59,135 nucleotides of DNA from Octopus bimaculoides (Eukaryota): the NCBI RefSeq assembly GCF_001194135.2, contig NC_068994.1:29550519-29609653 (forward strand). The letters are read 5' to 3'. A program made the position numbers and the translations under genes. Positions 1 to 58,223 of the stretch are shown here, one piece after another (positions within the stretch are counted from its first letter, which is position 1; each line of letters starts with the position of its first letter). A model generated the notes under the pieces. That model saw nothing but the letters and a program-made list of their open reading frames with translations. It did not search any database and was not told where the DNA came from.

Positions 1-2186
1 GAAGAAAAAATACCATCTTGACTGGGCTGCTGTTCAACAGTCTAGTGAATCAAACAAGAATTTAATTTCTATATAATCTAATTGGAGGGGTAGTAGTAAT
101 TTTAATTTAGAGGAAGGTAGATTAAGTAGTGATGGACAGCAGGTTAGGGATAAATCAAGCATGAGGAAAAGAAAAAAATGAAAATGGAAGGACGATTCCC
201 TAAGGAGTGGTTAGAGAAAATTTAAGGTAAGGGAATTAAGGTCAAGGTATTAAAGAATTACATCTATTCTTCAGTATATTTAGAATAATACAACGAAACA
301 CTAAAGTACTAAATTTAAAACCATAGGGAACATTAATAATTAAATTAGAACAAGATAAACATTTATAGTTAAAATAAGATATACATTAATGTGGGGTAGG
401 AAAAGAGAGATATTAATTTATAAGTAAAACCATAATATTAATGGTCAAAACCAGAACAAAGAGAGGGGGGGAAAGAAGGAGGAGGAAAAAAGGGGGAGGA
501 ATAAAGTTAGAAAAACAGGACTAAATTAAGAGAATTAAAGCTAAGGTTTTCGAAAAACTAATATAGTAGAAGAGACTCAGAATTACCTAGAGAAATGTAG
601 GAATATTATCAGTGTGTTGGGAAAGATTAAAATGTATTCTAAATTTATATTTAAAAGTTATAACTCAAATAAAGTAGTGAATAGTCAGGGAAATGAGAGG
701 AATTAAAATAATAAATTATTAGCAAGATTTACTTTTTAAGATATTTACTTTTTAAAATATTTAAAGGTGCGAGAGTAACAATGTACACATAGAACCCTAA
801 GGTCAGATCTATTGTTAATTAGATTAGGATTATCCTTAAGTTTAAAAATTTCGTNNNNNNNNNNGCGAGAGTAACAATGTACACATAGAACCCTAAGGTC
901 AGATCTATTGTTAATTAGATTAGGATTATCCTTAAGTTTAAAAATTTCGTAAATTTCCATAGAGCACAGTCCACAGCCATATCTACTATTTCTATAAGGT
1001 TGTGCTCTCCTGACGATTTCCCATTTAAGATTAAAATCGATACCATTTTCCTTCAATTCTCAAATTTTATTAGATAATGATGTGCTATTGGCGTTATGTT
1101 TAAGTCTAAATGAGGAATCGTTGTTTAAGGTTGATTATGCAACCAACATAAATGTAATTATTAGTTGGAGTAACTACTATACATTTATAGACCACATTAC
1201 GGGTTAAACAACGGCCAGATACCCGGCAGTGGGCTTTAATTCTACAATTGCAATTAAGAGGCTTATTAGCTATACATATATATTGCTATGTTGATTATTG
1301 AAAAAAGTATCTAAATTAGTTATATCAATATTGCTGGTTGTATTACTGGATATGCTATTGATATTGCTTGAGCTAGGAAGATTTATCTCATCAACTATGT
1401 TAACAGTTGAAGTATTATTATGTTCATTAACATGTGCATGATTATTGGTTGCGTTGCTGTTATTTATTGTTTAGTAGTTATTTGTATTGTTATCAATAAT
1501 AAGACAATTTTTATTTTCAAGGGTCCTAGTTAGTTCAATGTTCTTTCTATTTAACTTATTGATAATAGATCCTATATTTCCCAACCCACTGATAATATTC
1601 CTACATTTCTCTAGGTAATTCTGAGTCTCTTCTACTATATTACTTTTTCGAAAACCTTAGCTTTAATTCTCTTAATTTAGTCCTGTTTTTCTAACTTTAT
1701 TCCTCCCCCTTTTTTCCTCCTCCTTCCCCTTTGTTCTGGTTTTGGCCATTAATATTATGGTTTTACTTATAAATTAATATCTCTCTTCTACTACCCCACA
1801 TTAATGTATATCTTATTTTAACTATAAATGTTTATCTTGTTCTAATTTAATTATTAATGTTCCCTATGGTTTTAAATTTAGTACTTTAGTGTTTCGTTGT
1901 ATTATTCTAAATATACTGAAGAATAGATATAATTCTTTAATACCTTGACCTTAATTCCCTTACCTTAAATTTTCTTTAACCACTCCTTAGGGTATCGTCC
2001 TTCCATTTTCATTTTTTTCCCCTCATGCTTGATTTATCCCTAACCTGCTGTCCACCACTACTTAATTTACCTTCCTGTAAATTGAAATTACTACTACCCC
2101 TCCAATTAGATTGTATAGAAATTAAATTCTTGTTTGATTCACTGGACTGTTGAACAGCAGCCCAGTCAAGATGGTATTTTTTCTTC
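1..2186. repeat. Long inverted repeat (arms 1-624 and 1577-2186): inverted pseudo-LTR of PLE A
   Basis: gaagaaaaaataccatcttgactgggc at 1 is the reverse complement of the sequence ending at 2186; gttgggaaa 616-624 pairs with tttcccaac 1577-1585. The left arm runs off the window. Confidence 0.93.
745..1577 (-). pseudogene. Penelope-like element A, degraded C-terminal ORF (Asn-rich linker, Cys knuckle, GIY-YIG endonuclease)
   Basis: Minus-strand translation gives CNCRIKAHCRVSGRCLTRNVVYKC..YIYVG..LKQRF, then STSLSNKI*ELKENG..WEIVRRAQPY..CGLC..NRSDLRVLCVH, the PLE GIY-YIG/CCHH pattern, with stops and a frameshift. Confidence 0.88.
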
Positions 2187-2246
2187 TCTTACTCTTGTTT
2201 TTTGCACACATCTACAAAATGACTTTCTAAAATGAAATTCCATTAT

Positions 2247-2334
2247 GCAGCTGAGGAGTACATTTTCATTGCACATTTTATGTAGTGTTCTCACTACATG
2301 AATAAATGAAGTTTGTACGAAACGTACGTACTGC
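2247..2334 (+). ncRNA. Type I minimal hammerhead ribozyme with extended stem II
   Basis: Stem I GCAG(2247-50)/CTGC(2331-34); core CTGAGGA 2251-57; stem II GTACA/TGTAC; GAAA 2319-22; stem III AC-GTAC-GT; GTA cleavage triplet 2328-30. It lies in the PLE pLTR, sense to the element. Confidence 0.85.
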
Positions 2335-3049
2335 TATAACCTATTGAATTTTTGTTGCTTTTCTTCAAATTTTATTCACCAAATCTCTTGATTTTGTTTT
2401 GGGTTTTTACTCTACCAAATTCTGGTGCCTCAAACATTTTAAGTACCACATTTAATCTTTTGATTAAATCTATATTATACACACACACACACACACACAC
2501 ACACAATAATACGATATACGAGTTACTTTGTTCCCGGAGACCGTTCGTGAAGCGAAAAGTAGTAAAGCCTAGCAATAACTACCCGTAGTAGCAATGTTAT
2601 AAATCGTAATTCGTTCTCAGAAAAATATTTTACCTATAAAATCTATAATACACGTAAATATATGGCAATAAAACAGCAGTAGAATGTAAATAATATTTTA
2701 CGTAATGTAGAAAGAATGCCAAGATCATTTATAATAAAAAATATTATCATTATAATCGTTTTTTTGATCCCTTTCACTCGCACTAGACTCGCGCACACCA
2801 TCACTTGTAGACGCGGTCACCGATTCACAAGCACTCGTAGAGGGACTTGTGGATTTCTTTTTAAAAAACAAGTCTAGAGTTGTTCGCTTAGAAGCTTTTT
2901 TTCTGTGGGTGCGTCATGTCGTTGCACCTGTTGCTGTTGTAGGTGCTGCTGTTGTTAAAGGGTGGGCTATGTGACTGACTCGGGTGCGTACGGAGCCGTA
3001 TAGGCATTGATGTCGTGTTCAATTCCCAGTGGTTCGGCCCGTCTTTTTT

Positions 3050-3462
3050 TAAAACAACAACAGCACCTACAACAGCAACAGGCGCAACATCACGCGCATG
3101 CAGAAGTACGTGGGTGCACTGGGAACTCACTCAAACAACGTATTTCCAATCATTTGTCCTCCTTCAGAGTTCCGGAAAGGAGATACGTGACATCACTGGC
3201 CAGCCATGTCTGGCAATTACGAGACGAAGAGATTCCATACTCGATCGCATGGAAAATACTCGAGAACTTAGGCCCCTACATCAACGGGACGAAACGGTGC
3301 AAGTTATGCATTGCCGAACGCATGAGGATCCTTAAAGACTTGCTCGTGCCAGGGAAAATCATGAACTCCAGGACGGAGATTTTCGGACCATGCCTGCTGT
3401 TTAGAAAATTTCTGCTGGCTTTTTGGAATCCGCATGGCGGCACTACAGCCAGAAACCAATAG
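3050..3462 (+). pseudogene. Penelope-like GIY-YIG endonuclease fragment
   Basis: QKYVG (1-nt frameshift) CTGNSLKQRISNHLSSF..TSLASHVWQLR..WKIL..PYINGTKRCKLCIAE..NSRTEIFGPC. Confidence 0.85.
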
Positions 3463-4777
3463 CCAAGGCCGAAGGAAGACAATCGTATGCCNNNNNNNNN
3501 NNNNNNNNNNNNNNNNNNNNNNNNNNNNNNNNNNNNNNNNNNNNNNNNNNNNNNNNNNNNNNNNNNNNNNNNNNNNNNNNNNNNNNNNNNNNNNNNNNNN
3601 NNNNNNNNNNNNNNNNNNNNNNNNNNNNNNNNNNNNNNNNNNNNNNNNNNNNNNNNNNNNNNNNNNNNNNNNNNNNNNNNNNNNNNNNNNNNNNNNNNNN
3701 NNNNNNNNNNNNNNNNNNNNNNNNNNNNNNNNNNNNNNNNNNNNNNNNNNNNNNNNNNNNNNNNNNNNNNNNNNNNNNNNNNNNNNNNNNNNNNNNNNNN
3801 NNNNNNNNNNNNNNNNNNNNNNNNNNNNNNNNNNNNNNNNNNNNNNNNNNNNNNNNNNNNNNNNNNNNNNNNNNNNNNNNNNNNNNNNNNNNNNNNNNNN
3901 NNNNNNNNNNNNNNNNNNNNNNNNNNNNNNNNNNNNNNNNNNNNNNNNNNNNNNNNNNNNNNNNNNNNNNNNNNNNNNNNNNNNNNNNNNNNNNNNNNNN
4001 NNNNNNNNNNNNNNNNNNNNNNNNNNNNNNNNNNNNNNNNNNNNNNNNNNNNNNNNNNNNNNNNNNNNNNNNNNNNNNNNNNNNNNNNNNNNNNNNNNNN
4101 NNNNNNNNNNNNNNNNNNNNNNNNNNNNNNTTCAGTAACACATATAAGAATTTGCCAGTTCTTAGAGTACACAATAGTAAGAGTCTGTATGTAAGAAGTT
4201 GAGGCGTGTGGGACAGGGCGATCACTCGTCGTGATGTTAGGGCTTCCATGCCGGGCCGGGTTCTTGAGTACAGATGTTCTTCGCAGGCTGAGTTCTTGTC
4301 TATTATTTATCGTGGTGAAGATGAATCACACAAACAGAATCGAAGAGAGAAGTGCCGCGGTTAGCTGTTGGTAGCTGGTGTACGTAGAAGTCATGTTGAC
4401 GCTGTCGGCGATGCCGGTAGTCGTAGTGTCGTGTTGCTGCTGGCAGTCGTAGTTGTACGAAGCTGTTGATGTCGCTGGAACTGCTGCTGCTGCTCTGTGT
4501 GGTATACGGAACAAGTCTCTAAGAGATCTGAACCGCGACGATTTGACGGGTATAATTTAGTCTATTTATAGCAAAATAGAGGCTCCAGAGAGCATCTGAA
4601 AAACACTCTATCACGTGACCTTATTAGGGGCTGTGGTTGGTCGATTTACGTTCTGGCGGGAACGGTACGAAGCAGTTGCCGCTTCAAATAATAGTCAGTC
4701 ATGTGATGGATACAGTAGGCTGCTCTCTGCTACGCCCGAACTTGAATATTTATATTAGTGGGAAAGAGTGGTGTTCA

Positions 4778-6455: not shown

Positions 6456-6549
6456 GCCCGCATAGCTCAGTCGGTAGAGCATCAGACTTTTATGACTGAA
6501 TCTTCACAGAGTCATCTGAGGGTCGTGGGTTCAAGTCCCCCTGCGGGCG
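6456..6549 (+). tRNA. tRNA-Lys-TTT: tRNA-Lys(UUU) with 21-nt intron (6493-6513) at canonical position 37/38
   Basis: Acceptor stem GCCCGCA/TGCGGGC; D stem GCTC/GAGC; anticodon stem TCAGA/TCTGA; anticodon TTT 6489-91; GGTTCAAGT B box; one T.C mismatch in the T stem; T7 Pol III terminator 6559-65. Confidence 0.92.
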
Positions 6550-7532: not shown

Positions 7533-7759
7533 GGCGGCGAGATGGCAGAAACGTTAGCACGCTGGGCGAAATGCTTAGCGGTATTTCGTCTGCTGCAACG
7601 TTCTGAGTTCAAATTCCGCTGCGGTCGACTTAGCCTTTCATCCATTCGGGGTCGATTAAATAAGTACCAGTTACGCACTGGGTCGATGTAATCAACTTAA
7701 TCCGTTTGTCTGTTCTTGTTTGTCCCCTCTATGTTTAGCTCCTTGTGGGCAATAAAGAA
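7533..7759 (+). mobile_element. tRNA-derived SINE, family A, near full length
   Basis: ggcggcgagatggcagaaacgttagcac..ctgagttcaaattccgc..gcctttcatcc..; closely matches the copy at 57991-58223. Confidence 0.85.
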
Positions 7760-24544: not shown

Positions 24545-26152
24545 ATGTCACACTTGGGTGGGAAAACCATGCATATGTCTTCAAAACCTTTCGTTCCTCA
24601 GGGGTCAGAGTTTCAGACCCAATCAAATATGGCAGAAGTTCGAGAATATATCTTCCAAGACAGTAGTTATCCTGGTACTCAGTTTGTTCAACCTTGTTAT
24701 CAACCAGCTGAACTGAGGCCCAATATAGTGCAGGCTGCAGTTAATGAACAACCTACACCTGAGAACAAGAGCTCAACCATTAATTTTGACAATTCTTCCC
24801 ATGAAGGCTGTGCTTGTTGCCAAAAGACATGTCAATGCCCTAGTTGTACTGATGGTGGAAATGGTAGTGGAAGTGGTGTTGGCACTAGCAATAGCAGCAA
24901 TATAGGAGAACATAACATTTGCAATGTTAATGAACAACCTGTCACTAATTTGCCAATTCAGACGACTGGAAATGGAAAAAAGCAGCTATTTTGTGAATTT
25001 TGTGGTAAGAAATTTGTCCAAGAATATGTCCTGAAGGTCCACAGGCGTAAACATACTGGGGAAAAGCCATATGAATGTGAAATCTGCTCCAAGAAATTTG
25101 CCAGAAATGATACACTACGCAAACACAAGAGAATTCATACTGGACAGCCAAATGGCAGTGTTTCTAATGTTGGTATCTCTCCTAGTTTGAGTTTAATGAT
25201 TGCGCAAGGTGTTGTTGCCCAGGAAAATGGTGTAACCAATACTGGGAACCCAGGCACTATGATGTCTTCTGTTTCTAATTCTCAGACGTCTCAGAGAAAC
25301 AGTCAGAAATCATATACCTGTGACATTTGCCTGAAACCGTTTGCTCAGCGCCATTATTTACAGATCCATAAAAGAACACATACAGGTGAGCGCCCTTTTC
25401 ACTGTCAGGTTTGTGAACGAAGTTTCACTCGTAGAGACACACTGATTATTCATCAGAGAACACACACTGGTGTGAAACCATTTCATTGTGAAATCTGCAT
25501 GCAACAATTTGCACACAAACACAACCTCCAGATACACAAACGGAAACATACCGGGGAGAAACTGTTTCAATGTGACATCTGCGCTGAACTGTTCACACGC
25601 CGTGATTATTTACAAATTCATCGGCGGACTCATACAGGAGAGAAACCCTTCCAGTGTGATCTCTGTATCCAGAAGTTTGCCCGTCGCACCACATTGGAAA
25701 TTCACAGAAGAACACACACAGGAGAGAAGCCATTCCACTGTGAGTTCTGTGGAAAACAATTTGCTAATCGAGACAAGCTTCGCATACACCAGAGAACACA
25801 TGTACGCAAGAAGCCACACCAGTGCACTATATGTCTAAAGAAGTTTGCACGGAGAGATACACTTGAAATTCACAGCCGGAGACACTCTGGCCTCAAGCCA
25901 TTCCATTGTGACATTTGTCTGAAGAAATTTGCACAGAAAGATTACCTTCAGATTCATAAGAACACTGTGCACTCTGGACAGAAACCTTTCCAATGTGACC
26001 TCTGCACACAGAAGTTCTCCCGCCGTGATTCTCTGCAGCGGCACAAGAAAACACACTATAAACAGGTTGATGAAGTGCAGAAGGCCACATCTAGCATCAC
26101 AAATAACAATGTGGAAGAGGTGCAGCCACTGAATAAATACTTATGGTTGTAA
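24545..26152 (+). CDS. C2H2 zinc-finger protein, 535 aa, 11 fingers (2+9), single coding exon
   Basis: Uninterrupted ORF with CxxC-x12-HxxxH fingers and TGEKP-type linkers. The start codon is uncertain (several nearby Met). Confidence 0.95.
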   Translation: MSHLGGKTMHMSSKPFVPQGSEFQTQSNMAEVREYIFQDSSYPGTQFVQPCYQPAELRPNIVQAAVNEQPTPENKSSTINFDNSSHEGCACCQKTCQCPSCTDGGNGSGSGVGTSNSSNIGEHNICNVNEQPVTNLPIQTTGNGKKQLFCEFCGKKFVQEYVLKVHRRKHTGEKPYECEICSKKFARNDTLRKHKRIHTGQPNGSVSNVGISPSLSLMIAQGVVAQENGVTNTGNPGTMMSSVSNSQTSQRNSQKSYTCDICLKPFAQRHYLQIHKRTHTGERPFHCQVCERSFTRRDTLIIHQRTHTGVKPFHCEICMQQFAHKHNLQIHKRKHTGEKLFQCDICAELFTRRDYLQIHRRTHTGEKPFQCDLCIQKFARRTTLEIHRRTHTGEKPFHCEFCGKQFANRDKLRIHQRTHVRKKPHQCTICLKKFARRDTLEIHSRRHSGLKPFHCDICLKKFAQKDYLQIHKNTVHSGQKPFQCDLCTQKFSRRDSLQRHKKTHYKQVDEVQKATSSITNNNVEEVQPLNKYLWL

Positions 26153-26239: not shown

Positions 26240-26760
26240 CTTTACTTTTCATCCTTCTAGGGTTAATAAAGTATCAGTTAAGTAGGGAGCTCAACGGTAT
26301 TGACTAACCCCTTCCTCAAATTATATGGATTGGCAAAATCGTTAGTGGCAAAAAATACTTTGTTGTATTTGTTCCAGGTCTTTCATTCTGAGTTCAAATC
26401 CATCTAGCATCAACTTTGCCTTTTATCCTTTCAGTGTCAATAAAATGAACCAATTGAGTACTAGGGTTGATGGTATTGAATAACCTCTTCCCTCCCAATT
26501 TGCTTTCTTTGTGCCTAAATTAGAAATCATTATTACTTTATGCAATTAAGGCAGCAAGCTATCAGAAGCATTAGCACGTTTGCAGCATTCTTCTGGATCT
26601 TTCCATTTGGAGCTTAAATTCTGTTGCTTTTGACTTTTCACTCCATCCTTTCAGATTGATAAAATCAATACCAGTTGAGCATTGGGGTTGATGTAATTGA
26701 TTAACCCCACCCACTAAAATTACTGGCACCTGCCAAAATTTTAAACTCATTACTATTTTA
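26240..26760 (+). mobile_element. Three degenerate family A SINE copies downstream of the ZNF gene
   Basis: Repeated ctgagttcaaat / actttgccttttatcc / aagtaccag motifs. Confidence 0.65.
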
Positions 26761-37664: not shown

Positions 37665-37825
37665 GTGGTAATTTGTTTGTCTTTATGTTCTGAGTTCAAA
37701 TTCCGCCGAGGTCGACTTTCCCTTTCATCTTTTCAGTTGAGTACTGGGATCGATGTAATCAACTATCCTCCTCCCCCAAATTTCAGGCCTTGTGCCTATA
37801 GTAGAAAGAATTATTATTGTCATCA

Positions 37826-37857
<32 letters not shown>

Positions 37858-38151
37858 GCGGTATTTTGTTTGTCTTTACATTCTGAGTTCAAATTCCCCC
37901 AAGGTCGACTTTGCCTTTCATCCTTTCGGTGTCGATAAATTAAATATCAATGAAACTCTGGAATCAATGTAATCAACTTATCCCCTCCCGCAAAATGGCT
38001 GCTCTTGTGGCAAAATTTGAAACCATTTCTGCTGACCTAGCCTTTCATCCTTTTAGGGTCAATAAATTAAGTACCAGTCAAGTACTGCGGTCAGTGTGAT
38101 TGACCATCCCCCTCCCCTCACATTCCATGCCTTGTGCCTATAGTAGAAAGG

Positions 38152-38183
<32 letters not shown>

Positions 38184-38791
38184 GGCAGTGAGCTGATAGA
38201 ATTGTTAGCTTGCCAGACAATATGCTCGGTGGCATTCCTTCTGGTTCTACATTCTGAGTTCGATTTTGCCTTTGGTCTTTCAGGAGTTGATGAAATAAAT
38301 ATTAGTTGAGCACTGACGTTGAAGTAATTGATTGCCCCCTCCCTCAAAATTTTAGGCCCTGTGGCTATCAATAAAAGGATTATTATAGGGCAGCAAGCTG
38401 GTAGCATTGGAAAGAATGCTTTTCAGTATTTATTCCAGCTCTTTACATTATGAGTTCAAGTCCTGCTAAGGTCATCTTTGCCTTTTATCCTTTCAGGGTC
38501 AATAAAATAAAGTACCAGTCAAGTACTGGGGTTGCTGGCCTTGTGCCTAAAGTAGGAACTATTGTTATTATTATTGTTAAAGGCAGCAAGCTGGCAGAAT
38601 CAAATGTGTTGGGAAAAATGTTTAGCAGCATTTCTTCTGAATTTATGTTCTGAGTTCAAATTCTGTTGGAGTTGACTTTGCCTTTCATCCTTTTGGGGTC
38701 TATAAATTAAGTACCAGTGAAACACTGGGGTTGATTTAATTGACTAGTCCCCTTCCCCAACATTTCAGGCCTTGTGCCTATAGCAGAAAGG

Positions 38792-39030: not shown

Positions 39031-42000
39031 TACTATTACAGTGGTTGCATGTCTTTTGGCAGTTTGTCTCTTTTTATTGAGTTTCAGTCTTGGATTAGGT
39101 TCAATGCATGCTTGTGCATTTGGCACTTCGGGGCTGTTGCCAGATGCTCACTGCATTCTAGCATCTGGATGACATCGCCAGTGGAAAATCAGCCCTAGCA
39201 TTTAATAGAGTATTAATGTTGGATATGAGCATTGTAGCCTGGGATTGATTCTGACCATCAGCATTTACAGTTTAAGTTGTCTCTTGGAGGAATTTTAAGT
39301 TAAATAATGTGGATAAAAGTTCTTGATTTGGCAGTACTACAAGGTGGAATTAGAGAAGACTTTGCTGGTTTGGTATAAACCCTGACAGGCAGAGCCATAG
39401 TGAAGCTGCTGGCAACTAAATCAATCTGAGATGTGAGGAGAGTGATAAAACCTGGCACTCACTTGTTTAGCATACACAAATTGTTAATTTGTGAGCTTAT
39501 ATTGAACAACTATTATTACATCTGAGACAGATCCAGCTATCAACCTAAGTTAACATGAAGACTGATGCACCACTTCCCTTTCAAAAGGATGAGTGGTTTG
39601 TCTTTCTCTGTTATGAAAGGTGGATGAGAATAGTGAAATTATCTTGGCTTAATGGGGCCTATACTAACTAGATGGCTGTATTAATAGCAAGAACTGGGAG
39701 TTAAAAGTTTACTTATTTTTGTCATACCAGAGTAAATGGGATGCCCTAATATCCCTACAAGATTGTCACCCCCATTTTTAGGATTTTTTCTTGTTATTTT
39801 CTTGTTGTATACTGTTAATCCTATCTAGTGTTATCTATTTAGGTATCTCAGGAGGGTCATCAATTGGTTAACTGATTAGATAGTTAACCATTTGATAAGT
39901 AAATAATAAAAGATGAAATAGACCAGTGTGTGTGTTTATTATTGGCAAAATGACCCTCCCAAGATACAGGAAAATATGTTTCAACACATGAGTTCCCATC
40001 AAGAATCTTGCAAACCAAATACAAAAACTAAATATTAATGTATCATTATTGTTTTTTTTTTTATCCAACCCCTTTACTCGATGTACCCCCCACTGTTTCT
40101 TGTTTGTTTTTTTTTGTCTTTTTTTCTTTTGTATTTCACTTTTGTACTGACCCCAGCATTTTGGGCTGTTGTAGCCAATAATCATTATCACACCAGAGAA
40201 ATACTTAGCAGCATTGCTTCCAGCTCTTTACAATCTGAGTTCTTTACATTCATCTCTAAACAATGAAAGACTTTGCCTTTTGTCCTTTAAGGGTTTGAAG
40301 GGGTTTGACAAAATAAGTGGCAGCTGTGCACTGGGAATCAACTTGTCCCTTTTCTCAAAATTGCTGGCCTTGTGCCAAAATTAGAAAGATTTTTATTATC
40401 ATTATTATTATTATTACAATGAATGCCAAATGCTAGTAGTAGCAGCCAAATTTCCCTCATATTACACTTCTCCTAAGCATGGAAAGGGCTACTTTAGATA
40501 GTGTAGTCATAGAGATAACTCTAAAATGCCAATGGGATAGTCATGGGTAGAATGCCTTTTGATCATAGGTTTGCTTGATCAAGGTTGGCCTGGCGCTAAA
40601 CAACAACTTCTGATATTATTCATGCTTGTTTTGTTGAGCATGAATATCATCAAAACTTGTTTTGTCTTCTTGAAAAGGAAAATATTCTCCTCCCTCCCAA
40701 AATTTCAGGCTCCATGTTTGCAAAATAAAAAATTAAAATTAAAAAAAAAACCATTCTTCTTTTAGTAATTCCTTCCCTGTAAACCAAAATTTCCTGTGTC
40801 TCCTTCTTTCAGTCTCTACTGTTGGAGCTGCTTCATTATGTCACTAATGCCATAAGAAAAGACACATAAAACATCCATCCCCCCCTCCCTCTATACATCT
40901 GATGTATGTTACGTATGTAAAGAGTTCATATAATTGGTTCTGGTTTAGGTGCAAGTTTTTTTTTTATGTGTATATTTTAATTTTATCTTTTCTTTTTCTG
41001 TAGATCATGTTACTGCTGCTGTTGCTGCTGCTGGTTTCATGTAGTGCCAATATAAAAATGATGTTGTTGTTGTTGTTGCTATTGTTTTTGTTGTTGTTCA
41101 GCCTCAGGCTATCTCTGATGTAGTTGCAGACCAGGGAGCAAACAAATAAATATATGAAATAAACAAACATGACTCTACACAGTGTATTTAGGACACTTTT
41201 TTTTTTCGGCTACAATCATCCCATACTTATACAAGAATATTTCGACTACATTATCTAGTGTCACTTTCCTTTCTCAAGATATTAGGGTTTCATTTAACAA
41301 AAAAAAACAACTTTTAGTGGCTGTTTCCAGCTGGTTGAGCAAGCAGTACATAAAGACTCCCTCATAAAGGTGTTGGTAGTGATAGTAGTAATAATAGTAG
41401 TTGTAGCAGTATAAGTGGTGATGGTGGTAACTGTAGTGGAAGTGGTAGTGGTGGCAGTAGTAGTAATAGCAGTGGTGCCAGCAGTATGGTGGTAGTGGTG
41501 ATAGGATAGGAGTTTATTGTCATTCATGGCTCTGTTAGCTAAGCTGAACATCCACAAACTTTTTAGTACCAAAGGCAAATTGCAGATGGATAAGTAAGAA
41601 CTTAGATGGGTGTATCCTCCTGTTGTTCCTCCTCCTCCTCATCATTTTATGCCCACTTCTCATGCTATCAAGTTTAGACAGGTCATCACAGTGTGAGATA
41701 GTTTATATTTGGAATCACATCTCACTTGTAATATTTAATTTTTGACTTGGTTTCTACAGCTGGATACCCTTCTTTACAAAGTGTACCGGGTTTTTTTTAC
41801 TGTTGCCCCGGCACTAGAAAAGTTGTGATATCCTTGACAACATCATAGGTTCACTCAACTTGATATGTGCTGAAATAATCAACTTAAGCAATTTCATAAT
41901 CATGTAACTCATTGAATTATTTCTGAGTTCAAATTTTGTTGCAGTTTACTTTACCTTTCATGCTTTTGGGATCAATAAAATAAGTACTTTACCATTATTG

Positions 42001-44139
42001 CTCTTATAGGATAAAGTACCAGTTGAGCATCGGGGTCAGTGAAATCAAATAGTCCTCTCCTCCACAATTTCAGGCCTTGTGTCTATATTAGAAAGAATTA
42101 AATTACGGTTTTAGTATTAAGGGTTAAATCATTTTTTGTTTTTTTTTATATCTAGCTTTTTAGAAACTTCTTTCCATGGATGTTTTAAGATTTCAATGCA
42201 GGCAAAGTTTCATTTGCAGTTAAGGAGGTTTCCATTCTGCTGTATATCGTTGCTTGGTCTGTTGGAAATAGCAGCTAAATCTCTTTCAAATTACACTCTG
42301 TGATCTTTAAAAAAACGAGAAGGGCACATTGAATAACTTAGTCCTAGATAAACTGCTGGAAATATAAATGGAACAGTTGTGGTTGGAGTATTTTTGATAT
42401 TAAGCCTATTGTTTCAGGGTTGACTTGGGGGCTAAAGGGCACATCTGATTTTGTGACTGTGTGTGTTTATATAGAGAAGAGATCAGATAGGCCACTGAAA
42501 ATGACCAGTAATGCCAAAAAGAGTATTTTTATATGAGGCACACTGTTCCTCACATGCCTAGCACTCCACCATACTGTGGTAATAGTAGTGATGATTACAC
42601 CTCCAACCAACCCAATATGAAACAAACTGCGTCAAAAGGGTAGCTACTCTATGGTCGCTCCATGTGCTAGAAACAGCAACTAAATCTCCCCTAACACATT
42701 AAAAAAAAATGGAAAGGACACACTGGATAATGTCTGTTTGAAAAAAAAAGTAACAAGAACAATGCAGGATGGTTAAGGATGGAACATCACAGTTCACCTG
42801 AGGTCTAAACAACAACAGCATGAAAAATAAATATTGCAGTAGTAGCAGCAGTAGTAGTGTTAGTGGTGATATTATTAGTGACTCTGTCATTCCTAAATGC
42901 TTGATAATCATGGTAGTAGTGGTGGTAGTGGTGGTGGTGGTTGTAGTAGGTAGAGGAGGTGACACTCCTAACACCAACATATTTTATGAAATACTATTTA
43001 TTTCATTGTTTGTTTGCTTAATCTATCTGTACTGTTGCCATTTTGTATATTTAATAAAGAAGTATTCCATTAGCAGAATATTAAGTGTTGTGTTGAGTCT
43101 CTTTTCTTATCCTTTTTCTTATTTTGTTTCTGTTTGTTTTGTTTTGAGTTGGAAGGTGGACATCACCTTTAGCTACCAACTCAATGGTAACTGTTTCAGC
43201 ATCAGATGGTTGTAAGTAAGCATCATTGTCATACAAGTGATTTTGTTTGTTTCCAGTCTTCTGTGGAAAACTTATCTGGCCTTGGGAAAATATATGACCA
43301 TGCTTGGAAACAGGTGAGGATTGGTGATAGAAAGAGCATCCAACTGTAGAAAATCTGCCTCAACAGATTCCACCTGAACTATGTAAGCATGGAAAAGTGA
43401 ACATCAAATGTTGATGGTGATAGGGATTAGAGTATCAGATAAATTGCCTCACAGTCTTTGTTTCAACTTTTTTTTTCACTCTGAGTTCAAATCCCGCCGA
43501 GAACAACTTTGCTTTTTTTCCTTATTGGGTTAACAAAATATCAATCAAAGGCAGGGACTTGACAGAATTATAATAATATTGCACCATNNNNNNNNNNNNN
43601 NNNNNNNNNNNNNNNNNNNNNNNNNNNNNNNNNNNNNNNNNNNNNNNNNNNNNNNNNNNNNNNNNNNNNNNNNNNNNNNNNNNNNNNNNNNNNNNNNNNN
43701 NNNNNNNNNNNNNNNNNNNNNNNNNNNNNNNNNNNNNNNNNNNNNNNNNNNNNNNNNNNNNNNNNNNNNNNNNNNNNNNNNNNNNNNNNNNNNNNNNNNN
43801 NNNNNNNNNNNNNNNNNNNNNNNNNNNNNNNNNNNNNNNNNNNNNNNNNNNNNNNNNNNNNNNNNNNNNNNNNNNNNNNNNNNNNNNNNNNNNNNNNNNN
43901 NNNNNNNNNNNNNNNNNNNNNNNNNNNNNNNNNNNNNNNNNNNNNNNNNNNNNNNNNNNNNNNNNNNNNNNNNNNNNNNNNNNNNNNNNNNNNNNNNNNN
44001 NNNNNNNNNNNNNNNNNNNNNNNNNNNNNGTTTATTGTAGAGCCAGTGCCACTTGATGTTTGAAAGCTTCAATGTTATGTATTTTTGGTTTTGTCAGATC
44101 AAATTAAAGGTTTAGGTGCACATTTTTAGTTTGTTGTTC

Positions 44140-44763
44140 AGACCGACTTGACTGCCACCCATTTCTTTGACATCATACTCGACCTCGCAAACGGCCTCCA
44201 CCATCCCTACTCTAAGCCGAATAAGACTATAAAATACATTCACAAACATTCCAACGACCCGCAGTCTATAACCAGCCACCTTGTCGATGATATATCACAG
44301 TGCACATCAGAACTATCTACCAATAAGAGAATTTTCTAGGAATTTGCACCAAAATACAATTATGCTTTATGAAATGTGGCTTTAATGAGACAAAAAAAAA
44401 AGCCAACATTAGATAATATGGTATAATTTCCTTATAACACTGATATCAAGACTTCCATTGCTAGAATTTTCTACAGTAACAACACTTTTCTTCATATCAT
44501 CGTCATTTCAAAGTTTTCAATAAAATCAATAATTTTTTCATATTTGGCTACATCCAAACTAGCACAGACTGTTACCTTTTCCAATATGGTAAGGCTCAGC
44601 AGACATACATCACTCCTGGATAGCCCTATCTGCCACACTAATAGAGCTTTTGGAACTGTTCAGAAACCAAAGCTTGTCCTTTTAACTCATATTACTTTCA
44701 GAAGAATACTGTCTATAAATGTAATGTCTATAAACTTCCCCAATAGATATTGATTAAACTCAC

Positions 44764-44802
<39 letters not shown>

Positions 44803-45000
44803 TGAGGAAAGATCTTCCCTGCACCAATATGCATCCCGGAATCCTGACAAAAGAAAAGTCTTTTCACCATCCCAACACATTTGGCATATCCGTGAGTACC
44901 ACTACCATACTACAGTGACTGCCGGCCCTGTAACATATGTACAGCTGAAAGTTTCCCATGAAATTACTCAACAGAAAAATCTTAACTTGTTACCACGTAT
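44140..45000 (+). pseudogene. Degraded Penelope-like RT thumb to GIY-YIG fragment
   Basis: FFDIILDL..PYSKPNKTIKYIHKHSN, IWYN-PYN, CRPCNICTAE. Confidence 0.72.
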
Positions 45001-48354: not shown

Positions 48355-48500
48355 AAAATTGAGTTCAAATGCCGCTGAGGTCGACTTTATCTTTCATTCT
48401 TTCGGGGTCAATCAAATAAGTAAAAGTTAAGCACTGGGATCGAAGTAATCGACTAGCCTCATCCATCAAAATATCAGGCCTTGTGCCTATAGTAGAAAGG
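48355..48500 (+). mobile_element. 5'-truncated family A SINE inside the Helitron remnant
   Basis: gagttcaaatgccgctgaggtcgacttt..ggccttgtgcctatagtagaaagg. Confidence 0.78.
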
Positions 48501-48992: not shown

Positions 48993-51420
48993 GTGTATAT
49001 AGGAATGCTTGGTCGGAGTGTATATCCTTTCGTTAATACAGTCTTCGTTTCCGAAAATCGGTGGAGGTCTATAGAGAGATGACGGTCAATCCTTCCTAGA
49101 CCGAAGTAGTAAAGTACAACTAGAAAGTCATAGGAAACAATTCTTTAGACTATTTAAGCACTTCGGACTCAACATCACTATTGAAAAAGATTACCGTAGA
49201 GCAAACTTCCTTGACGTTACCTTCAGGTTTGATACTGAATTATATAAACCTTTTCATAAACCTAATGATAACATTAAGTATATTAATGTAGCATCCAACC
49301 ATCCACCCTCTATAATACGAAGATTAGTTAGGAATATATCAATTAGAATATCTAAGTTATCTGCTACTAAAAAAATTTTGAATCACATGCACCCAATTAC
49401 AACACTGCCTTAGCTAGGGTTGGTTACTGAGAGGATATGGAATACATACGCGACACCGGTATACCCAACTCTGCCTATTCCACCACTAATAATACATACG
49501 ACATACGAACACAACGTCACTGTGAACGAACTGATTCGGATCAAAAACGAACTGACTCGGATCATGTAAATCAAAAAGATTTTTTCAATACATCAAAGGA
49601 CGCACCAAAACTCCTAGACAAACATAACACAACGCAATAAATTGTCCCAACACACAAGAACCAATGTAATAAACAATAAATATAAGAAACATGATGTCCT
49701 CTGGTATAACCCAATCCACGGTTCACATGTTTCAACGAAGATCGCTAGGGGATTTTATGCCGCTTTAGATGTTTTCCAACATCAAATAGATACAATGTTA
49801 TTTTTAATAGGCACACTGTGAAGGTATCATACACTGCATTAGTAACAGAAAAATTCTCCAAGCGTTGAATAACCCACCCACTGGACCCCTAGTCTATGAT
49901 GGAGAAACTACTTCAGGTTCGACAAATTAGGAGGATAGCATGTATAACAAAATGTCAAGAAAAGTAATATGAACCAAAATGAAAAGCACCCGCCGCAGCC
50001 ACATCCGATTAATAGCAAAAATAGAGATTTAGCTTACACGGTAACGGTGTCGGAAATTGAAATCAGTAGAGCCCCAAATGCAACTAAATCTAGTAAATGC
50101 TCATGCAGAAAAAGAAAAAAAAAACAAAACGCCCATTGATGAACCTCTGTATGAGTACCGATGTTGTATATAAGTGCACCGTACACACAAGGGCAGGATC
50201 CTACGTTTACATTAGTGCAACGGCTGATTCGTTCAAGAACTGATACTAAAACCATGTCACCAGCTTCAATAAAATCAACAAGCGGCACTCGACATCTTTG
50301 GCTGATTTTGTGTGGCAACTTAAGGAGGATAAGATGAAATATTTCACTTTATCCATAATAAGACATGCACAAGCATACAGGAGATGCAGATTGTGCTCCG
50401 AGGAATTACTCTCTATTTTGTGGACCACTGAGAAGCTCATTTATAGGATTTCTGAAAGACTATCAAGTTGCTTGCATGCTACTAAATGCACTTTCGCACT
50501 ATACAGTGGGCACGAATTAGAGTAATCGTTAACTAAATAAATAACTACGCTTTACTTAAATGTATAGATGAATAACCGTAACATCCACATTCGTATGAAC
50601 ACAATGTCACATTAGTTACCAGCATCACTTGGATATGCCTTGGCCATTGTATACCGCTTAAAGTGAGAAAAATACCAAGTTTCGCTCACCAGTAAGTATC
50701 GTTCACCGTAGGATGAAAACACAAAAACTTACGCTTGCCGGCACGGGTGATTCTAACTCTGGCATTGATGCTTTCTACACGCTGTCGGTTGTTTCATTAG
50801 TCATTCAAAAAATTCACATCTACTATCTCAGTATTTATGCCCGTATTTATGACTGTACAACTGCTATAAGTATACCAGCCAGACCCAGTGAACAGTACAA
50901 GAGAACCTATGACTCCTCACGAAGCGGAGTCGTACCACTAGCAAGTAATAGGCAATGTCTTTATTAATATCGACTCAATTCTGTGTGCGAGCGTATGTGC
51001 GCAAAACCACGTATGTGTGTGCTTGTATGTGCGTGTGCATTTGTACGCGCAAGTATACGTGCGCCAGACCACATTTGTATGGGCATCTGTACACCTATAT
51101 CTAGCAATGGTCATATCTGATACTTTTTTCGCTGTATTGTGCATTTGTTTCTTTTTGTATCTGATATTTGTTATGGATCTTCAATAAGAATGAAGCTGTA
51201 TACCTTAATTTGCCATTTCTATATAAGAAAACCAAGAAGAAATCTTGCGGAAGAGAGTTTATTTTAACGAGATACCTCTTGAAAACACACGAGAAGACAA
51301 ATCTACACTGAGGGATACACCTAAACCAGATGTTTTCTATTTCATCTGCGAGGAATCAATGCTAGATGGGTCGAAACAATTGTAGTGATCAATAAAGATT
51401 CTCAAGCCTGCCATCTTCCG
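48990..51420 (+). mobile_element. 5'-truncated Penelope-like element (YRDD-type RT, GIY-YIG, long 3' region)
   Basis: GLYRDDG..NFLDVTF..KPFHKPNDNIKYINVASNHPP; WYNP; CSCRK..VVYKC..YVY..STSLADFVWQLK..CRLC; stops and frameshifts. Confidence 0.9.
51342..51388 (+). ncRNA. Degenerate hammerhead-like motif at the PLE 3' end
   Basis: TCAT-CTGCGA (one core A missing)..GAAAC-AATT-GTA-GTGA, palindromic ACAATTGT; stem II pairs poorly. Confidence 0.4.
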
Positions 51421-51582: not shown

Positions 51583-52511
51583 ATAATAATAATAATAATG
51601 ATAATAATAATAATAACAATNNNNNNNNNNNNNNNNNNNNNNNNNNNNNNNNNNNNNNNNNNNNNNNNNNNNNNNNNNNNNNNNNNNNNNNNNNNNNNNN
51701 NNNNNNNNNNNNNNNNNNNNNNNNNNNNNNNNNNNNNNNNNNNNNNNNNNNNNNNNNNNNNNNNNNNNNNNNNNNNNNNNNNNNNNNNNNNNNNNNNNNN
51801 NNNNNNNNNNNNNNNNNNNNNNNNNNNNNNNNNNNNNNNNNNNNNNNNNNNNNNNNNNNNNNNNNNNNNNNNNNNNNNNNNNNNNNNNNNNNNNNNNNNN
51901 NNNNNNNNNNNNNNNNNNNNNNNNNNNNNNNNNNNNNNNNNNNNNNNNNNNNNNNNNNNNNNNNNNNNNNNNNNNNNNNNNNNNNNNNNNNNNNNNNNNN
52001 NNNNNNNNNNNNNNNNNNNNNNNNNNNNNNNNNNNNNNNNNNNNNNNNNNNNNNNNNNNNNNNNNNNNNNNNNNNNNNNNNNNNNNNNNNNNNNNNNNNN
52101 NNNNNNNNNNNNNNNNNNNNNNNNNNNNNNNNNNNNNNNNNNNNNNNNNNNNNNNNNNNNNNNNNNNNNNNNNNNNNNNNNNNNNNNNNNNNNNNNNNNN
52201 NNNNNNNNNNNNNNNNNNNNNNNNNNNNNNNNNNNNNNNNNNNNNNNNNNNNNNNNNNNNNNNNNNNNNNNNNNNNNNNNNNNNNNNNNNNNNNNNNNNN
52301 NNNNNNNNNACTTCCCTTGGCAAACAGGACACAGTAGTGTGTCGATAAGCCAGCTGGAGGAGATGTCCTCCTGGGGCTAAAAGCAACAGTAACATCCACC
52401 CCTAGGGGTCAGCCACACTTAAGTGGCAATATACTACACTCTCTCTCTCTATATATATATACATACACACATACATACTTTTATTAAAAAGCATAAAAAA
52501 TATCACAAAAA

Positions 52512-52549
52512 CTGTTACTCAGAGTTTCACGTTCCCGTTCGTCGGACAG
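52512..52549 (-). ncRNA. Minimal type I hammerhead ribozyme candidate with U4C core
   Basis: Minus strand CTGT-CCGACGA-ACG(GGAA)CGT-GAAA-C(TCTGA)G-TA-ACAG; stem I extends to 8 bp (AAAACTGT/ACAGTTTT). Confidence 0.65.
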
Positions 52550-54591
52550 TTTTGTTTAGAATATATATCTATCTAATTTTGCATTGAACCTGCAATTTGT
52601 AGACTGTTTTAGTCAACTGTAATCATACGAAAAAGTTAGGAATGAAGAATAAGTAACTGGATGCAAATAATAGGTGAAAAAATAAGCAATATTTCGAACC
52701 TGAATCGAAATGTAGAGTGTGATGTCATTTAAATGATCAATTAACTTATCGGATCTGATGGTATGTATGACGCATATTTTTTCCAGAGAAATGTCTCAAA
52801 GAAAAAAATCCCTCCTTTCGGGTTCTATATGCGAAGTTGGGCTCGTATTACATGCTTTAATGCACTAAAAACTCTTTTTCTGAATATGCGCTTCTGAAGT
52901 TCGGGTGCGTCTAATATTGATTTCAAATTTTGGTATAAGGCAGCAATTTCGCGAGAGGGGTAAGTCGATTACATCGACCCCTGTATTCAACTGGTATTTA
53001 TTTTATCAATCCCTCGGCGNNNNNNNNNNNNNNNNNNNNNNNNNNNNNNNNNNNNNNNNNNNNNNNNNNNNNNNNNNNNNNNNNNNNNNNNNNNNNNNNN
53101 NNNNNNNNNNNNNNNNNNNNNNNNNNNNNNNNNNNNNCTATTTTTTCTTTTTGTAAAATTTGTCTTAGCAAGACTATTGCAGTATTATTGTAACAGATTG
53201 TTAAACCACATCATTTTTATTAATTTCATACTCATTACAAATATACGAATAAGAATTTGTTTTAATTAATGCTATTTTAAGTAAATGAATATTTTTATTT
53301 TCAAAATTAGCATTCAAATTAGTATTTCGTAAAAATACCAAACATTGAAAAAAGGAAAAGAAAAACAGCGTACTTATATAACATTATTTAACATAGCACA
53401 CAATAGTAATGAATATTATTAAAATTAAAACATTGTCATGTAATGAGTAATATTTTCCTAATAATAGTCACTGTCGGTTTTTTGGTCATAAAAGTCACGC
53501 AGTCTCATATGGAATTAAATATGTTACATCGGTAATGGATTAATTGTTAACCTATAGTATTGTTATTGATAATATATAATATTTGTTGGAAATATACAAA
53601 TAAGAAACTTTTAAATTAACTTTTATTTTGAAATATTTATTTTTAAAATTAGTATTCATTTCATTATTTTGTATAAAACGCAATGAAATATGATAAAAGC
53701 GAAATAATAAATATTGTATCTATGTGACATTACCTGCTATTACTCATAGTAGCAAAAGTATATGCAAACGTTACCCGTTACACGATGGGTAACACTCTGG
53801 GACATACATACATACATACGTATGTATTCTTTTATTTCAAGGGTTCAGTCGATAATATCAACCACAGTACTTTTATTAAAGTTTGATATATATACACACA
53901 CGCGAGCGCGCACGCACACACGCGAGCTCGCACGCACACACGCGAGCGCGCACGCACACACATACATATCTTTGTTGAACTGCCAAGTTACGGTACATAA
54001 AGAGATAGCTTAGTTTTCTAATTGGTGTAATGTAGTGACGGGCATAAAGGCAGGTAGACAAGATTTCACTGGTACCAATACATTTTCTGGAACCCAAGCG
54101 GGAGAAATGCTACATCATTACCCAGCTACTTCTGGCAACTCAACGAACATTACAGTCCATACGAGCTTTGATGAAACATTATTACTAAAAACATTATTAC
54201 CAGTATGATACCTGCGAATCCTAGTAGTCCTGTAATTTACGTACAGCAGAAAGCTTTCACGCCCTATGCACTCATGAACCACTGTTTAATGAAAATTCAA
54301 ACCTAAGACCTATCTGAACTATCTACCTGTACTCAATCTAGATAGGAAATCTGTAATTTAACCTCATCCACACACCTATACATATACCACAACGTCTACT
54401 GAAGAGCATTATCATATAATACAACATGGATATCTATTGAGTCTGAATGATGGGAATACATGGCTCACTATACAAGATTGTTCGACCATTATACTTTCAG
54501 AGGCATGGAATTAATAATAACTTGAATTTAATTAGAAATAATTATTATTGAAATTATTATTCTTTGGTTGACAAGACAAACAAAAAACTCA

Positions 54592-57990: not shown

Positions 57991-58223
57991 GAGGCGGCGA
58001 GCTGGGAGAAACGTTAGCACGCCTGGCGAAATGCTTAGTGGTATTTCGTCTGCCGCTACGTTCTGAGTTCAAATTCCGCCGAGGTCGACTTTGCCTTTCA
58101 TCCTTTCGAGATCGATAAATTAAGTACCAGTTACGCACTGGGGTCGATATAATCGACTTAATCCGTTTGTTCGTCCTTGTCTGTCCCCTCTGTGTGAGGT
58201 CCCTTGTGGGCAGTAAAGAAATA
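57991..58223 (+). mobile_element. Full-length family A SINE with 15-bp target-site duplication
   Basis: agaaataatcgtagc at 57976-57990 and again at 58224-58238. Confidence 0.92.

What the first reader, a model, noticed from the sequence alone, without database searches (positions are those of the whole stretch)
2247..2334. Complete hammerhead ribozyme with a branched 61-nt stem II in a Penelope pLTR
Seen: all catalytic-core bases are present (CUGAGGA, GAAA, GUA triplet; cut predicted after A2330), with a 4-bp stem I and a 2-bp stem III capped by the palindrome ACGTACGT. Stem II (2258-2318) is large: GTACA/TGTAC, then TTCATT/AATGAA, then a perfect 8-bp hairpin ATGTAGTG-ttct-CACTACAT. Established: PLEs carry minimal type I hammerheads in their pLTRs, and palindromic stem III loops allow cleavage as dimers. 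Inference: the structured stem II insert may be a family-specific module (tertiary contact, dimerisation aid or RT-binding site), and the second pLTR copy just left of the window could supply the dimer partner.
Basis: partly seen in the sequence, partly recalled or inferred. Interest (0 to 1): 0.82.

Follow-up and report, generated by a model that had tools for sequence, protein, structure and literature searches.

The report
Octopus retroelement hammerhead, oversized stem II
A complete hammerhead self-cleaving RNA motif sits near the end of a dead Penelope-like retrotransposon copy in the octopus genome; it is ordinary except that one of its three helices is four to five times longer than in 45 related elements, and whether that extension has a function could not be tested.

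Summary
The motif is real. Window 2247-2334 (+) carries a complete type I hammerhead: 4-bp stem I, CUGAGGA, G10.1-C11.1, GAAA, a 2-bp helix III inside the palindrome ACGUACGU, and A17. A full descriptor finds it once in the window, against 0-0.003 hits per simulated window.

The context is a Penelope-like element of the Hydra clade, not Penelope proper. A decayed C-terminal GIY-YIG remnant on the minus strand shows the clade's signatures: CxCx5C, no CCHH, CxxC and CxH. The hammerhead lies in an inverted, 5'-truncated copy of the element's 3' region, about 145 nt from its end at a (CA)13 repeat.

Stem II is 61 nt and folds as one unbranched hairpin (z = -5.4). "Branched" is therefore wrong. In 45 hammerheads found downstream of related endonuclease genes, helix II is 12-15 nt, so this one is a clear outlier.

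The presumed second copy left of the window is inverted and cannot be a dimer partner on the same transcript. No other copies of this octopus family could be reached, so conservation of the insert is untested.

Best reading: a genuine retroelement hammerhead relic with a tolerated helix II expansion. It is a new variant of a known kind, of moderate interest.

The parts
2247..2334 (+). Type I hammerhead motif: stem I 2247-2250/2331-2334 (possibly extended by A2245-U2337 and U2246-A2336 with U2335 bulged); core C3-A9 = 2251-2257; helix II 2258-2318; G12-A14 = 2319-2321; helix III A2322-U2329 and C2323-G2328 with loop GUAC; A17 = 2330, predicted cleavage between 2330 and 2331
2258..2318 (+). Expanded helix II: unbranched 61-nt hairpin, 5 bp (2258-2262/2314-2318), 7 bp (2264-2270/2305-2311), 11 bp (2277-2287/2292-2302), loop UUCU
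   Evidence: z = -5.4; only the inner 11-bp hairpin is highly probable in the 294-nt context
1574..2186 (+). Right arm of the large inverted repeat, read as part of the 3' untranslated region of the inverted, 5'-truncated PLE copy that carries the hammerhead
   Evidence: 95.1% identity to the reverse complement of 1-627 over 627 columns; 17 mismatches, 14 gap positions
2187..2477 (+). Continuation of the same 3' terminal region up to the element end; contains the hammerhead, then 143 nt of tail
   Evidence: inferred to be the same element. Its counterpart in the left arm lies outside the window, because the alignment stops exactly at window base 1
2478..2505 (.). (CA)13 microsatellite with TA-rich flanks at the presumed 3' boundary and insertion site
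   Evidence: PLE insertions favour microsatellites (PMC8557442)
745..1573 (-). Decayed 5'-truncated PLE coding remnant (linker plus C-terminal GIY-YIG endonuclease): CxCx5C 1252-1226, YIYVG 1156-1139, LKQRF 1129-1115, frameshift, CGLC..E 975-940, N.R 915-895, CVH 885-865, stop at 745; an assembly gap with duplicated flanks at 855-864
1..627 (-). Left arm of the inverted repeat, read as the 3' untranslated region of the main (minus-strand) truncated copy; runs off the window start

Best explanation
Window 2247-2334 holds a genuine hammerhead ribozyme motif inherited from a Penelope-like retrotransposon (PLE) of the Hydra clade, in Octopus bimaculoides.

In active elements of this clade, a type I hammerhead lies in the 3' region, which becomes the pLTR when copies insert in partial tandem. 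It is thought to cut the element's transcripts after H17. Because helix III is only 2 bp inside an 8-nt palindrome, cutting probably needs two copies that pair through ACGUACGU.

In this octopus lineage the loop of helix II has been expanded into a stable 61-nt hairpin. Helix II points away from the catalytic core, so the extension is most likely a tolerated and largely neutral elongation. It may add some stability to helix II. A dedicated functional module is less likely.

This particular copy is a dead relic. It sits in an inverted, 5'-truncated fragment without a reverse transcriptase, next to a frameshifted endonuclease remnant.

Shown: the motif, its statistical significance, the PLE context, the hairpin fold of the insert, and its outlier length. 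Inferred: self-cleavage, dimer dependence, neutrality of the insert, and that the insert is shared by the family.
For: - Motif and chance: the full descriptor is unique in the window, with 0-0.003 hits expected. Rfam Hammerhead_1 aligns end to end.
- Core details typical of PLE hammerheads (PMC4209133): G10.1-C11.1, short helix I (4 bp), palindromic helix III.
- PLE context: the endonuclease remnant aligns with a family of C-terminal GIY-YIG proteins. In L003 these follow reverse-transcriptase motifs (YRDDG, FLDV). It shows CxCx5C, no cysteines inside GIY..YIG, CxxC and CxH, as described for the Hydra clade.
- Head-to-head inverted truncated copies are a typical PLE arrangement (Fig. 2 legend of PMC8557442).
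- Relatives: 45 sense hammerheads against 6 antisense, downstream of related endonucleases; 15 of 62 loci against 0 in the antisense control with the strict core.
- Stems I and II of the relatives covary.
- At least 13 relatives have an 8-nt palindromic helix III (ACUCGAGU or ACUUAAGU) of the same architecture.
- The insert is a stable hairpin.
- The energy gap between the hammerhead fold and the minimum-free-energy fold (+5.1 kcal/mol) equals the median for relatives (+5.2).
- Precedent for a hugely enlarged helix: the discontinuous Clec2 hammerhead has a helix I of 150-1500 nt (PMC6155905).
Against: - There is one copy only. No second copy of this family was reachable, so neither conservation nor covariation of the insert is known.
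- A covariance model built from the relatives' hammerheads does not detect the site, even with filters off. Rfam's score is below gathering.
- Nearest-neighbour folding gives the hammerhead stems a probability of about 0.001 in the native 294-nt context. Competing hairpins sequester CUGAGGA and GAAA, helped by four GUAC palindromes.
- The hammerhead lies about 800 nt after the endonuclease stop codon, against about 120-250 nt in relatives. Assigning it to that coding remnant rests on the inverted-repeat model.
- PLE minimal hammerheads cleave poorly in vitro in any case (PMC4209133).
Confidence: 0.62

Rival explanations
1. Inactivated relic. The ancestral element had a compact helix II like its relatives. 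The roughly 50-nt hairpin arose in this copy, or shortly before its insertion, by slippage or palindromic duplication. It has no function and may impair folding.
For: - All 45 relatives have a helix II of 12-15 nt.
- A compact Hydra-type hammerhead relic exists in the same octopus window at 52511-52550.
- Both strands of the insert contain short direct repeats, ACATTTT twice and ATGAA twice, which suggests duplication (reading of the sequence).
- The copy is dead: frameshift, stop codons and no reverse transcriptase.
- The hammerhead stems are improbable at equilibrium.
Against: - The core and all three closing helices are intact, although the two arms differ by about 5%.
- The insert is an almost perfect nested hairpin that preserves closure of helix II. 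A random insertion would rarely do that.
- The relatives' hammerheads are equally disfavoured by the energy model.
Confidence: 0.25
2. Functional module. The extended helix II is conserved in a cephalopod PLE family. It serves a specific role, such as protein or reverse-transcriptase binding, stabilising the dimer, or regulating cleavage.
For: - The hairpin is very stable and well formed (z = -5.4).
- Craig et al. report Naiad elements whose two hammerhead core halves lie 35-50 nt apart and escape standard descriptors. Long-spacer hammerheads may therefore recur in PLEs.
Against: No comparative or experimental data. There is a single copy in a dead element, and relatives manage with 12-15 nt.
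Confidence: 0.12
3. Chance resemblance in AT-rich repeat DNA.
For: Rfam score below gathering. The family-specific covariance model does not find it.
Against: - Expected 0-0.003 hits per window.
- It lies in the right place and orientation in a PLE 3' region.
- G10.1-C11.1 and the palindromic helix III match the class (PMC4209133).
- The relatives also fail Rfam's threshold.
Confidence: 0.03

Closest known systems
Hammerheads of Hydra-clade Penelope-like elements (Craig, Yushenova, Rodriguez, Arkhipova 2021, PMC8557442)
   Same: [quoted passage not shown] Short helix I and weak helix III, often an 8-nt palindrome. The element ends at a microsatellite. Inverted truncated copies occur.
   Different: Helix II is 61 nt here against 12-15 nt in 45 relatives. 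The hammerhead is about 800 nt from the stop codon instead of about 120-250 nt. It has G10.1-C11.1, whereas most relatives sampled have U10.1-U11.1. It is not detected by a covariance model of the relatives.
Minimal PLE hammerheads (Cervera and de la Pena 2014, PMC4209133)
   Same: Short helix I (4-5 bp), conserved G10.1-C11.1, palindromic positions 15.2-16.2 and loop 3, a proposed dimeric active form, and location in PLE terminal repeats.
   Different: Those have a helix II of 6-8 bp and usually an unpaired base before 10.1. Here there are 23 bp in three segments and no such bulge.
Dimeric type I hammerheads of newt satellite 2 and ASBVd (Forster et al. 1988, cited in PMC4209133 and PMC6155905)
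   Same: An unstable helix III with a palindromic loop that can form an extended intermolecular helix III (here 8 bp, ACGUACGU, -9.8 kcal/mol).
   Different: Those occur as direct tandem repeats on one transcript. Here the only other copy is inverted.
Discontinuous hammerhead in mammalian Clec2 3' UTRs (Martick et al. 2008, via PMC6155905)
   Same: A natural hammerhead in which one helix is greatly enlarged without loss of the core.
   Different: There it is helix I (150-1500 nt) of a type III ribozyme in a host gene. Here it is helix II (61 nt) of a type I ribozyme in a retroelement.
'HHR_half_core' cases in Naiad PLEs (PMC8557442, Methods)
   Same: CUGANGA and GAAA separated by tens of nucleotides (35-50 nt) in a PLE 3' untranslated region, missed by standard descriptors with a 7-17 nt spacer.
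   Different: Those were not shown to have hammerhead stems and belong to the clade with an N-terminal endonuclease. Here all three stems are present and the element has a C-terminal endonuclease.

Membership tests
Hammerhead ribozyme, type I | Conserved core C3 U4 G5 A6 N7 G8 A9 ... G12 A13 A14, with A15.1-U16.1 and H17 (not G) | tested here: met
   CUGAGGA 2251-2257, GAA 2319-2321, A2322-U2329, A2330
Hammerhead ribozyme, type I | Three helices around the core, with helices II and III closed by loops and helix I open | tested here: met
   Helix I 4 bp, helix II 23 bp in 61 nt, helix III 2 bp plus loop GUAC. The constrained fold is -22.7 against a minimum free energy of -27.8 kcal/mol.
Hammerhead ribozyme, type I | Score at or above Rfam RF00163 gathering threshold (34 bits) | tested here: not met
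   18.8 bits. The 53-nt insertion is penalised. Compact hammerheads of related PLEs also fail, at gathering and even at E <= 1, so this is a weak test for this subclass.
Hammerhead ribozyme, type I | Site-specific self-cleavage after position 17 | not testable with these tools
   Needs in vitro transcription and cleavage assays, or mapping of RNA 5' ends
Hammerhead ribozyme, type I | Helices supported by covariation among homologous copies | not testable with these tools
   No second copy of this family was retrievable. Covariation was shown only for distant relatives, with ascertainment by the descriptor.
Penelope-like element, Hydra clade | C-terminal GIY-YIG endonuclease lacking the CCHH motif; linker CxCx5C; CxxC and CxH around the conserved E and N | tested here: met
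   CNCRIKAHC, VVYKC..YIYVG, CGLC..E, N.R, CVH on the minus strand at 1252-865. The criteria come from PMC8557442 section 11.
Penelope-like element, Hydra clade | PLE reverse transcriptase upstream of the endonuclease in one reading frame | tested here: not met
   This copy is 5'-truncated at 1573 and has no reverse-transcriptase residues. Homologues do have one (L003 ORF 6960-8225), as does another copy in the window at 49009-50486.
Penelope-like element, Hydra clade | Hammerhead in the 3' region or pLTR, in the same orientation as the reading frame | tested here: inconclusive
   The visible hammerhead is in the inverted truncated copy and so is antisense to the endonuclease remnant. The sense copy would lie left of window base 1.
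Penelope-like element, Hydra clade | Match to a covariance model of Hydra-clade hammerheads (R1, built here from 29 relatives) | tested here: not met
   No hit at 2247-2334 with E <= 10 and filters off. The model does find a compact relic at 52511-52550 (33.6 bits).
Penelope-like element, Hydra clade | Insertion into a (TA)n microsatellite | tested here: inconclusive
   The 3' end abuts tatattata(CA)13ataata, which is a (CA)n repeat with TA-rich flanks
pLTR (pseudo-LTR, direct terminal repeat from partial tandem insertion) | Two direct repeats flanking the reading frame | tested here: not met
   The only repeat is inverted (1-627 against 1574-2186). No direct copy of 1574-2480 exists in the window.

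The most novel reading that the evidence does not exclude
A cephalopod lineage of Hydra-clade Penelope-like elements carries an active hammerhead whose helix II has been expanded into a conserved structured hairpin of about 60 nt. More generally, hammerheads with a long helix II are systematically missed by the descriptors used to survey PLEs (7-17 nt spacer). If so, some clades reported to lack hammerheads, such as the Naiad 'half-core' cases, may have them after all.
Probability: 0.15. Interest if true: 0.55.

Novelty: new variant of a known kind. Interest (0 to 1): 0.4.

Why it matters
Hammerheads in Penelope-like elements are known, so the presence of one is not news.

The length of helix II is the new part. 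Every one of 45 hammerheads from related elements keeps helix II at 12-15 nt. Published surveys search with short fixed spacers, so a complete motif with a 61-nt helix II would be invisible to them.

If the extension is shared by a family and still permits cleavage, three things follow:
- It widens the known structural range of natural type I hammerheads.
- It gives a reason to re-examine PLE clades scored as lacking hammerheads.
- It offers a natural scaffold showing that large hairpins can be carried in helix II.

If it is private to this dead copy, it is only a decay product.

Tried and rejected
1. Rfam at gathering threshold over the whole window found only a tRNA. The hammerhead appears only with a permissive E-value.
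2. The weak antisense sR9 snoRNA hit (21 bits) and the mir-101 hit (12 bits) at the same place were treated as chance.
3. Looking for other copies in the window: blastn with 1574-2480 and with the insert alone found only the sequence itself and the inverted arm.
4. An exact-pattern scan of metagenome contigs for the same hammerhead gave 0 hits.
5. Attempts to reach DNA left of the window, or other octopus copies, through exact-protein look-ups of window ORFs were all not on record (3007-3462, 3010-3462, 2166-2294, 2352-2588). Only the zinc-finger gene was found, and it identifies the genome.
6. Protein searches found no relative closer than about 43% identity to either endonuclease remnant, so there is no same-family DNA.
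7. Naiad (N-terminal endonuclease) membership was considered, because the endonuclease ORFs look stand-alone. It was rejected: homologues show reverse transcriptase upstream and the Cys motifs are of the Hydra type.
8. Pfam does not recognise these endonuclease remnants.
9. The covariance model of the relatives' hammerheads fails on the candidate.
10. A retrozyme (tandem hammerhead repeats) was rejected, since there is no tandem direct repeat.
11. A pre-miRNA reading of the 61-nt hairpin was rejected. The only support is a 12-bit hit at E = 8, and the terminal loop is 4 nt.
12. Supplementary files of PMC8557442 with the Hydra hammerhead sequences are not held.

Full report
**1. The observation**

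The sequence at 2247-2334 reads GCAG-CUGAGGA-[GUACA...UGUAC]-GAAA-CGUACGUA-CUGC. In standard hammerhead numbering:
- C3-A9 = 2251-2257
- G10.1-C11.1 = G2258-C2318
- G12-A14 = 2319-2321
- A15.1-U16.1 = A2322-U2329
- C15.2-G16.2 = C2323-G2328, with loop GUAC
- H17 = A2330
- Stem I = 2247-2250 paired with 2331-2334

The inner hairpin is 11 bp rather than 8 bp.

The title word "branched" is wrong. The 61 nt fold into one interrupted hairpin of 5 + 7 + 11 bp with loop UUCU. Its energy is -20.6 kcal/mol, it makes up 63% of the ensemble, and z = -5.4 against dinucleotide shuffles.

**2. Chance**

I wrote a descriptor that requires stem I of at least 4 bp, CTGANGA, a closing helix II of at least 4 bp, GAAA, a 2-bp helix III and H17. 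On both strands it finds this site and nothing else in the window. It found 0 and 0.003 sites per window in 300 order-1 and 300 order-3 Markov simulations. A more relaxed scanner also finds only this site.

Rfam's Hammerhead_1 model aligns end to end at 2245-2337 with 18.8 bits (E = 0.056 for the 301-nt search against all families). That is below the gathering score of 34, so the site is absent from the whole-window scan. The shortfall carries little weight. Compact, covarying hammerheads from related elements also fail to reach gathering, and even E <= 1.

**3. Host and element**

An exact match of the C2H2 zinc-finger ORF at 24545-26152 places the window on Octopus bimaculoides chromosome CM046614.1 in assembly GCA_001194135.2.

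The hammerhead lies 60 nt beyond the right arm of a large inverted repeat: 1-627 against 1574-2186, 95.1% identity, 17 mismatches and 14 gap positions. The alignment stops exactly at window base 1, so the left arm almost certainly continues outside the window.

Between the arms, on the minus strand, lies a decayed coding remnant with one frameshift and several stop codons. It reads CNCRIKAHC ... VVYKC...YIYVG...LKQRF ... STSLSNKIWELK ... LKWEIV ... CGLCSMEIYEIF ... INNRSDL ... CVH (coordinates).

The remnant is 40% identical to P0001 and aligns with a large family of proteins from marine metagenomes and invertebrate genomes. In longer members the same endonuclease follows reverse-transcriptase motifs. 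In L003 ORF 6960-8225 these are YRDDG, FLDV and TKPN..YVH..SNHP, followed by WFNPPFS..KHF, CxCx5C and GIY-YIG.

Craig et al. 2021 define the Hydra clade of Penelope-like elements by exactly these features (PMC8557442 section 11):
- a linker Zn-finger modified to CxCx5C
- insertion into microsatellites
- readily detected hammerheads
- presence in Mollusca

The simplest reading of the locus is therefore as follows:
- A 5'-truncated main copy lies on the minus strand. Its coding remnant is 1573->745 and its 3' untranslated region is 744->1 and beyond.
- It is joined head to head at 1573/1574 to an inverted, more severely truncated copy (1574->about 2477 on the plus strand). That copy consists only of the 3' region.
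- The hammerhead is in this inverted copy, 143 nt from its end at tatattata(CA)13.

**4. Comparison with relatives**

A scan of metagenome contigs with an endonuclease alignment returned 80 loci.
- With the strict core, 15 of 62 loci that have enough downstream sequence carry a hammerhead within 700 nt after the endonuclease on the sense strand. The antisense control gave 0.
- Allowing the known, tolerated U10.1-U11.1 mismatch (PMC3088659) gives 45 distinct sense hammerheads against 6 antisense.
- Their stems I and II show many double changes: 9 of 11 pairs, covariation score 0.587 against 0.175 in shuffles, and a sharp peak against slid registers. The caveat is that these sequences were selected by a descriptor that demands pairing.
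- At least 13 have an 8-nt perfectly palindromic helix III (ACUCGAGU or ACUUAAGU). This is the same architecture as ACGUACGU here.

In all 45, helix II is 12-15 nt in total. The octopus motif, at 61 nt, is a four- to five-fold outlier.

It is also about 800 nt from the endonuclease stop codon, against about 120-250 nt in relatives.

A covariance model built from 29 relatives (R1) does not detect it, even with filters off. The same model does find a compact Hydra-type hammerhead relic elsewhere in the window, at 52511-52550 on the minus strand (33.6 bits, E = 9e-8). That relic has a U4-to-C core mutation and lies next to a microsatellite. Octopus Hydra-type elements therefore also carry the ordinary compact form.

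**5. Folding**

Nearest-neighbour thermodynamics does not favour the hammerhead fold. It comes to -22.7 kcal/mol against a minimum of -27.8. In the 294-nt native context the hammerhead stems have a probability of about 0.001, while the inner 11-bp hairpin is near 1.0.

The competitors are two hairpins:
- one pairs GCAG-CUGAGGA with UUUUCAUUGC
- the other, UGUACG-AAA-CGUACG, is helped by four GUAC palindromes

This is not specific to the candidate. For the 29 relatives the same gap has a median of +5.2 kcal/mol. The energy model ignores the core's tertiary contacts, and PLE hammerheads are known to cleave poorly as monomers (PMC4209133).

An intermolecular ACGUACGU duplex is worth -9.8 kcal/mol. 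An additive estimate for the dimeric ribozyme (-55.8) is close to twice the monomer minimum (-55.6) but above the best cofold (-62.8).

**6. The dimer-partner idea**

The other arm is inverted, so its hammerhead would be on the minus strand. A transcript crossing both arms would contain one sense and one antisense copy. It would fold into a duplex of at least 627 bp that buries the ribozyme. The neighbouring copy cannot be a partner on the same transcript. Dimerisation would need a second transcript.

**7. What could not be done**

No other copy of this family was reachable:
- none in the window
- none in metagenome contigs
- no protein relative above about 43% identity
- the window's small ORFs are not on record, so flanking DNA could not be fetched

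**8. Verdict**

This is a genuine, statistically secure hammerhead motif in the 3' terminal region of a dead Hydra-clade Penelope-like element. Its helix II has been expanded into a well-formed, unbranched 61-nt hairpin.

The most likely mechanism in active ancestors is self-cleavage after A17, probably as an intermolecular or tandem dimer through the palindromic helix III, to process element transcripts. The extension would be a tolerated elongation of a helix that points away from the core. The Clec2 discontinuous hammerhead, with its 150-1500 nt helix I, is a precedent (PMC6155905).

Two readings remain open: the insert is a private, possibly inactivating mutation of this copy, or it is a conserved functional module.

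The finding bears on one published observation. Craig et al. searched with a 7-17 nt spacer and recorded Naiad cases with core halves 35-50 nt apart. Hammerheads with a long helix II may be under-counted in these elements.

Noticed in passing
window 52511-52550 (-): Compact Hydra-type hammerhead relic, ACUGU-CCGACGA-ACG-GGAA-CGU-GAAAC-UCUG-AGU-A-ACAGU. It scores 33.6 bits, E = 9e-8 with model R1. The core carries U4-to-C, which is probably inactivating. It lies about 45 nt from a (GT/TA)n microsatellite, and no endonuclease was detected upstream before the N gap.
   Followed up: partly
window 3007-3462 (+), with 2921-2956 / 3053-3088: A second, different Hydra-type GIY-YIG remnant, 27% identical to the first, truncated within the YIG motif. 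A 36-nt inverted repeat (94% complementary) lies just upstream. Its 3' region falls in the N gap 3492-4130, so any hammerhead there is unseen.
   Followed up: partly
window 49009-50486 (+) and 44124-44890 (+): Further decayed Hydra-type PLE copies. One has reverse-transcriptase, linker and endonuclease segments in order (49009-49395, 49573-49853, 50133-50486). The other is a reverse-transcriptase fragment. No hammerhead was detected downstream by the descriptor, Rfam or R1.
   Followed up: partly
loci L001-L084 (metagenome and invertebrate contigs): Most Hydra-clade hammerheads sampled (20 of 29 unique sequences) have a U10.1-U11.1 mismatch in place of the near-universal G10.1-C11.1 pair. They all score below Rfam's Hammerhead_1 threshold, so they are invisible to standard annotation.
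   Followed up: partly
window 1-627 / 1574-2186: A near-perfect inverted repeat of at least 627 bp. If transcribed through, it would form a long double-stranded RNA hairpin, a plausible source of small RNAs.
   Followed up: no
window 781-938: The 10-N gap at 855-864 is flanked by a duplicated stretch of about 75 nt (781-854 repeated at 865-938). This looks like an assembly artefact and artificially lengthens the endonuclease ORF.
   Followed up: no
window 6456-6549 (+): tRNA gene (Rfam 60.1 bits) with a 22-nt insertion in the anticodon region, presumably an intron. ARAGORN could not assign the anticodon.
   Followed up: partly
window 24545-26152 (+): Intact 535-aa ORF with about 10 C2H2 zinc fingers. 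It matches an annotated gene on Octopus bimaculoides chromosome CM046614.1 exactly, which identifies the source genome.
   Followed up: yes
window 7601-7667, 26386-26452, 37688-38714, 41921-41987, 48357-48423, 58061-58127 and others: At least 13 copies of a SINE-like repeat (TTCTGAGTTCAAATTCCGC...GGTCGATAAATTAAGTAC), plus abundant microsatellites and N gaps.
   Followed up: no
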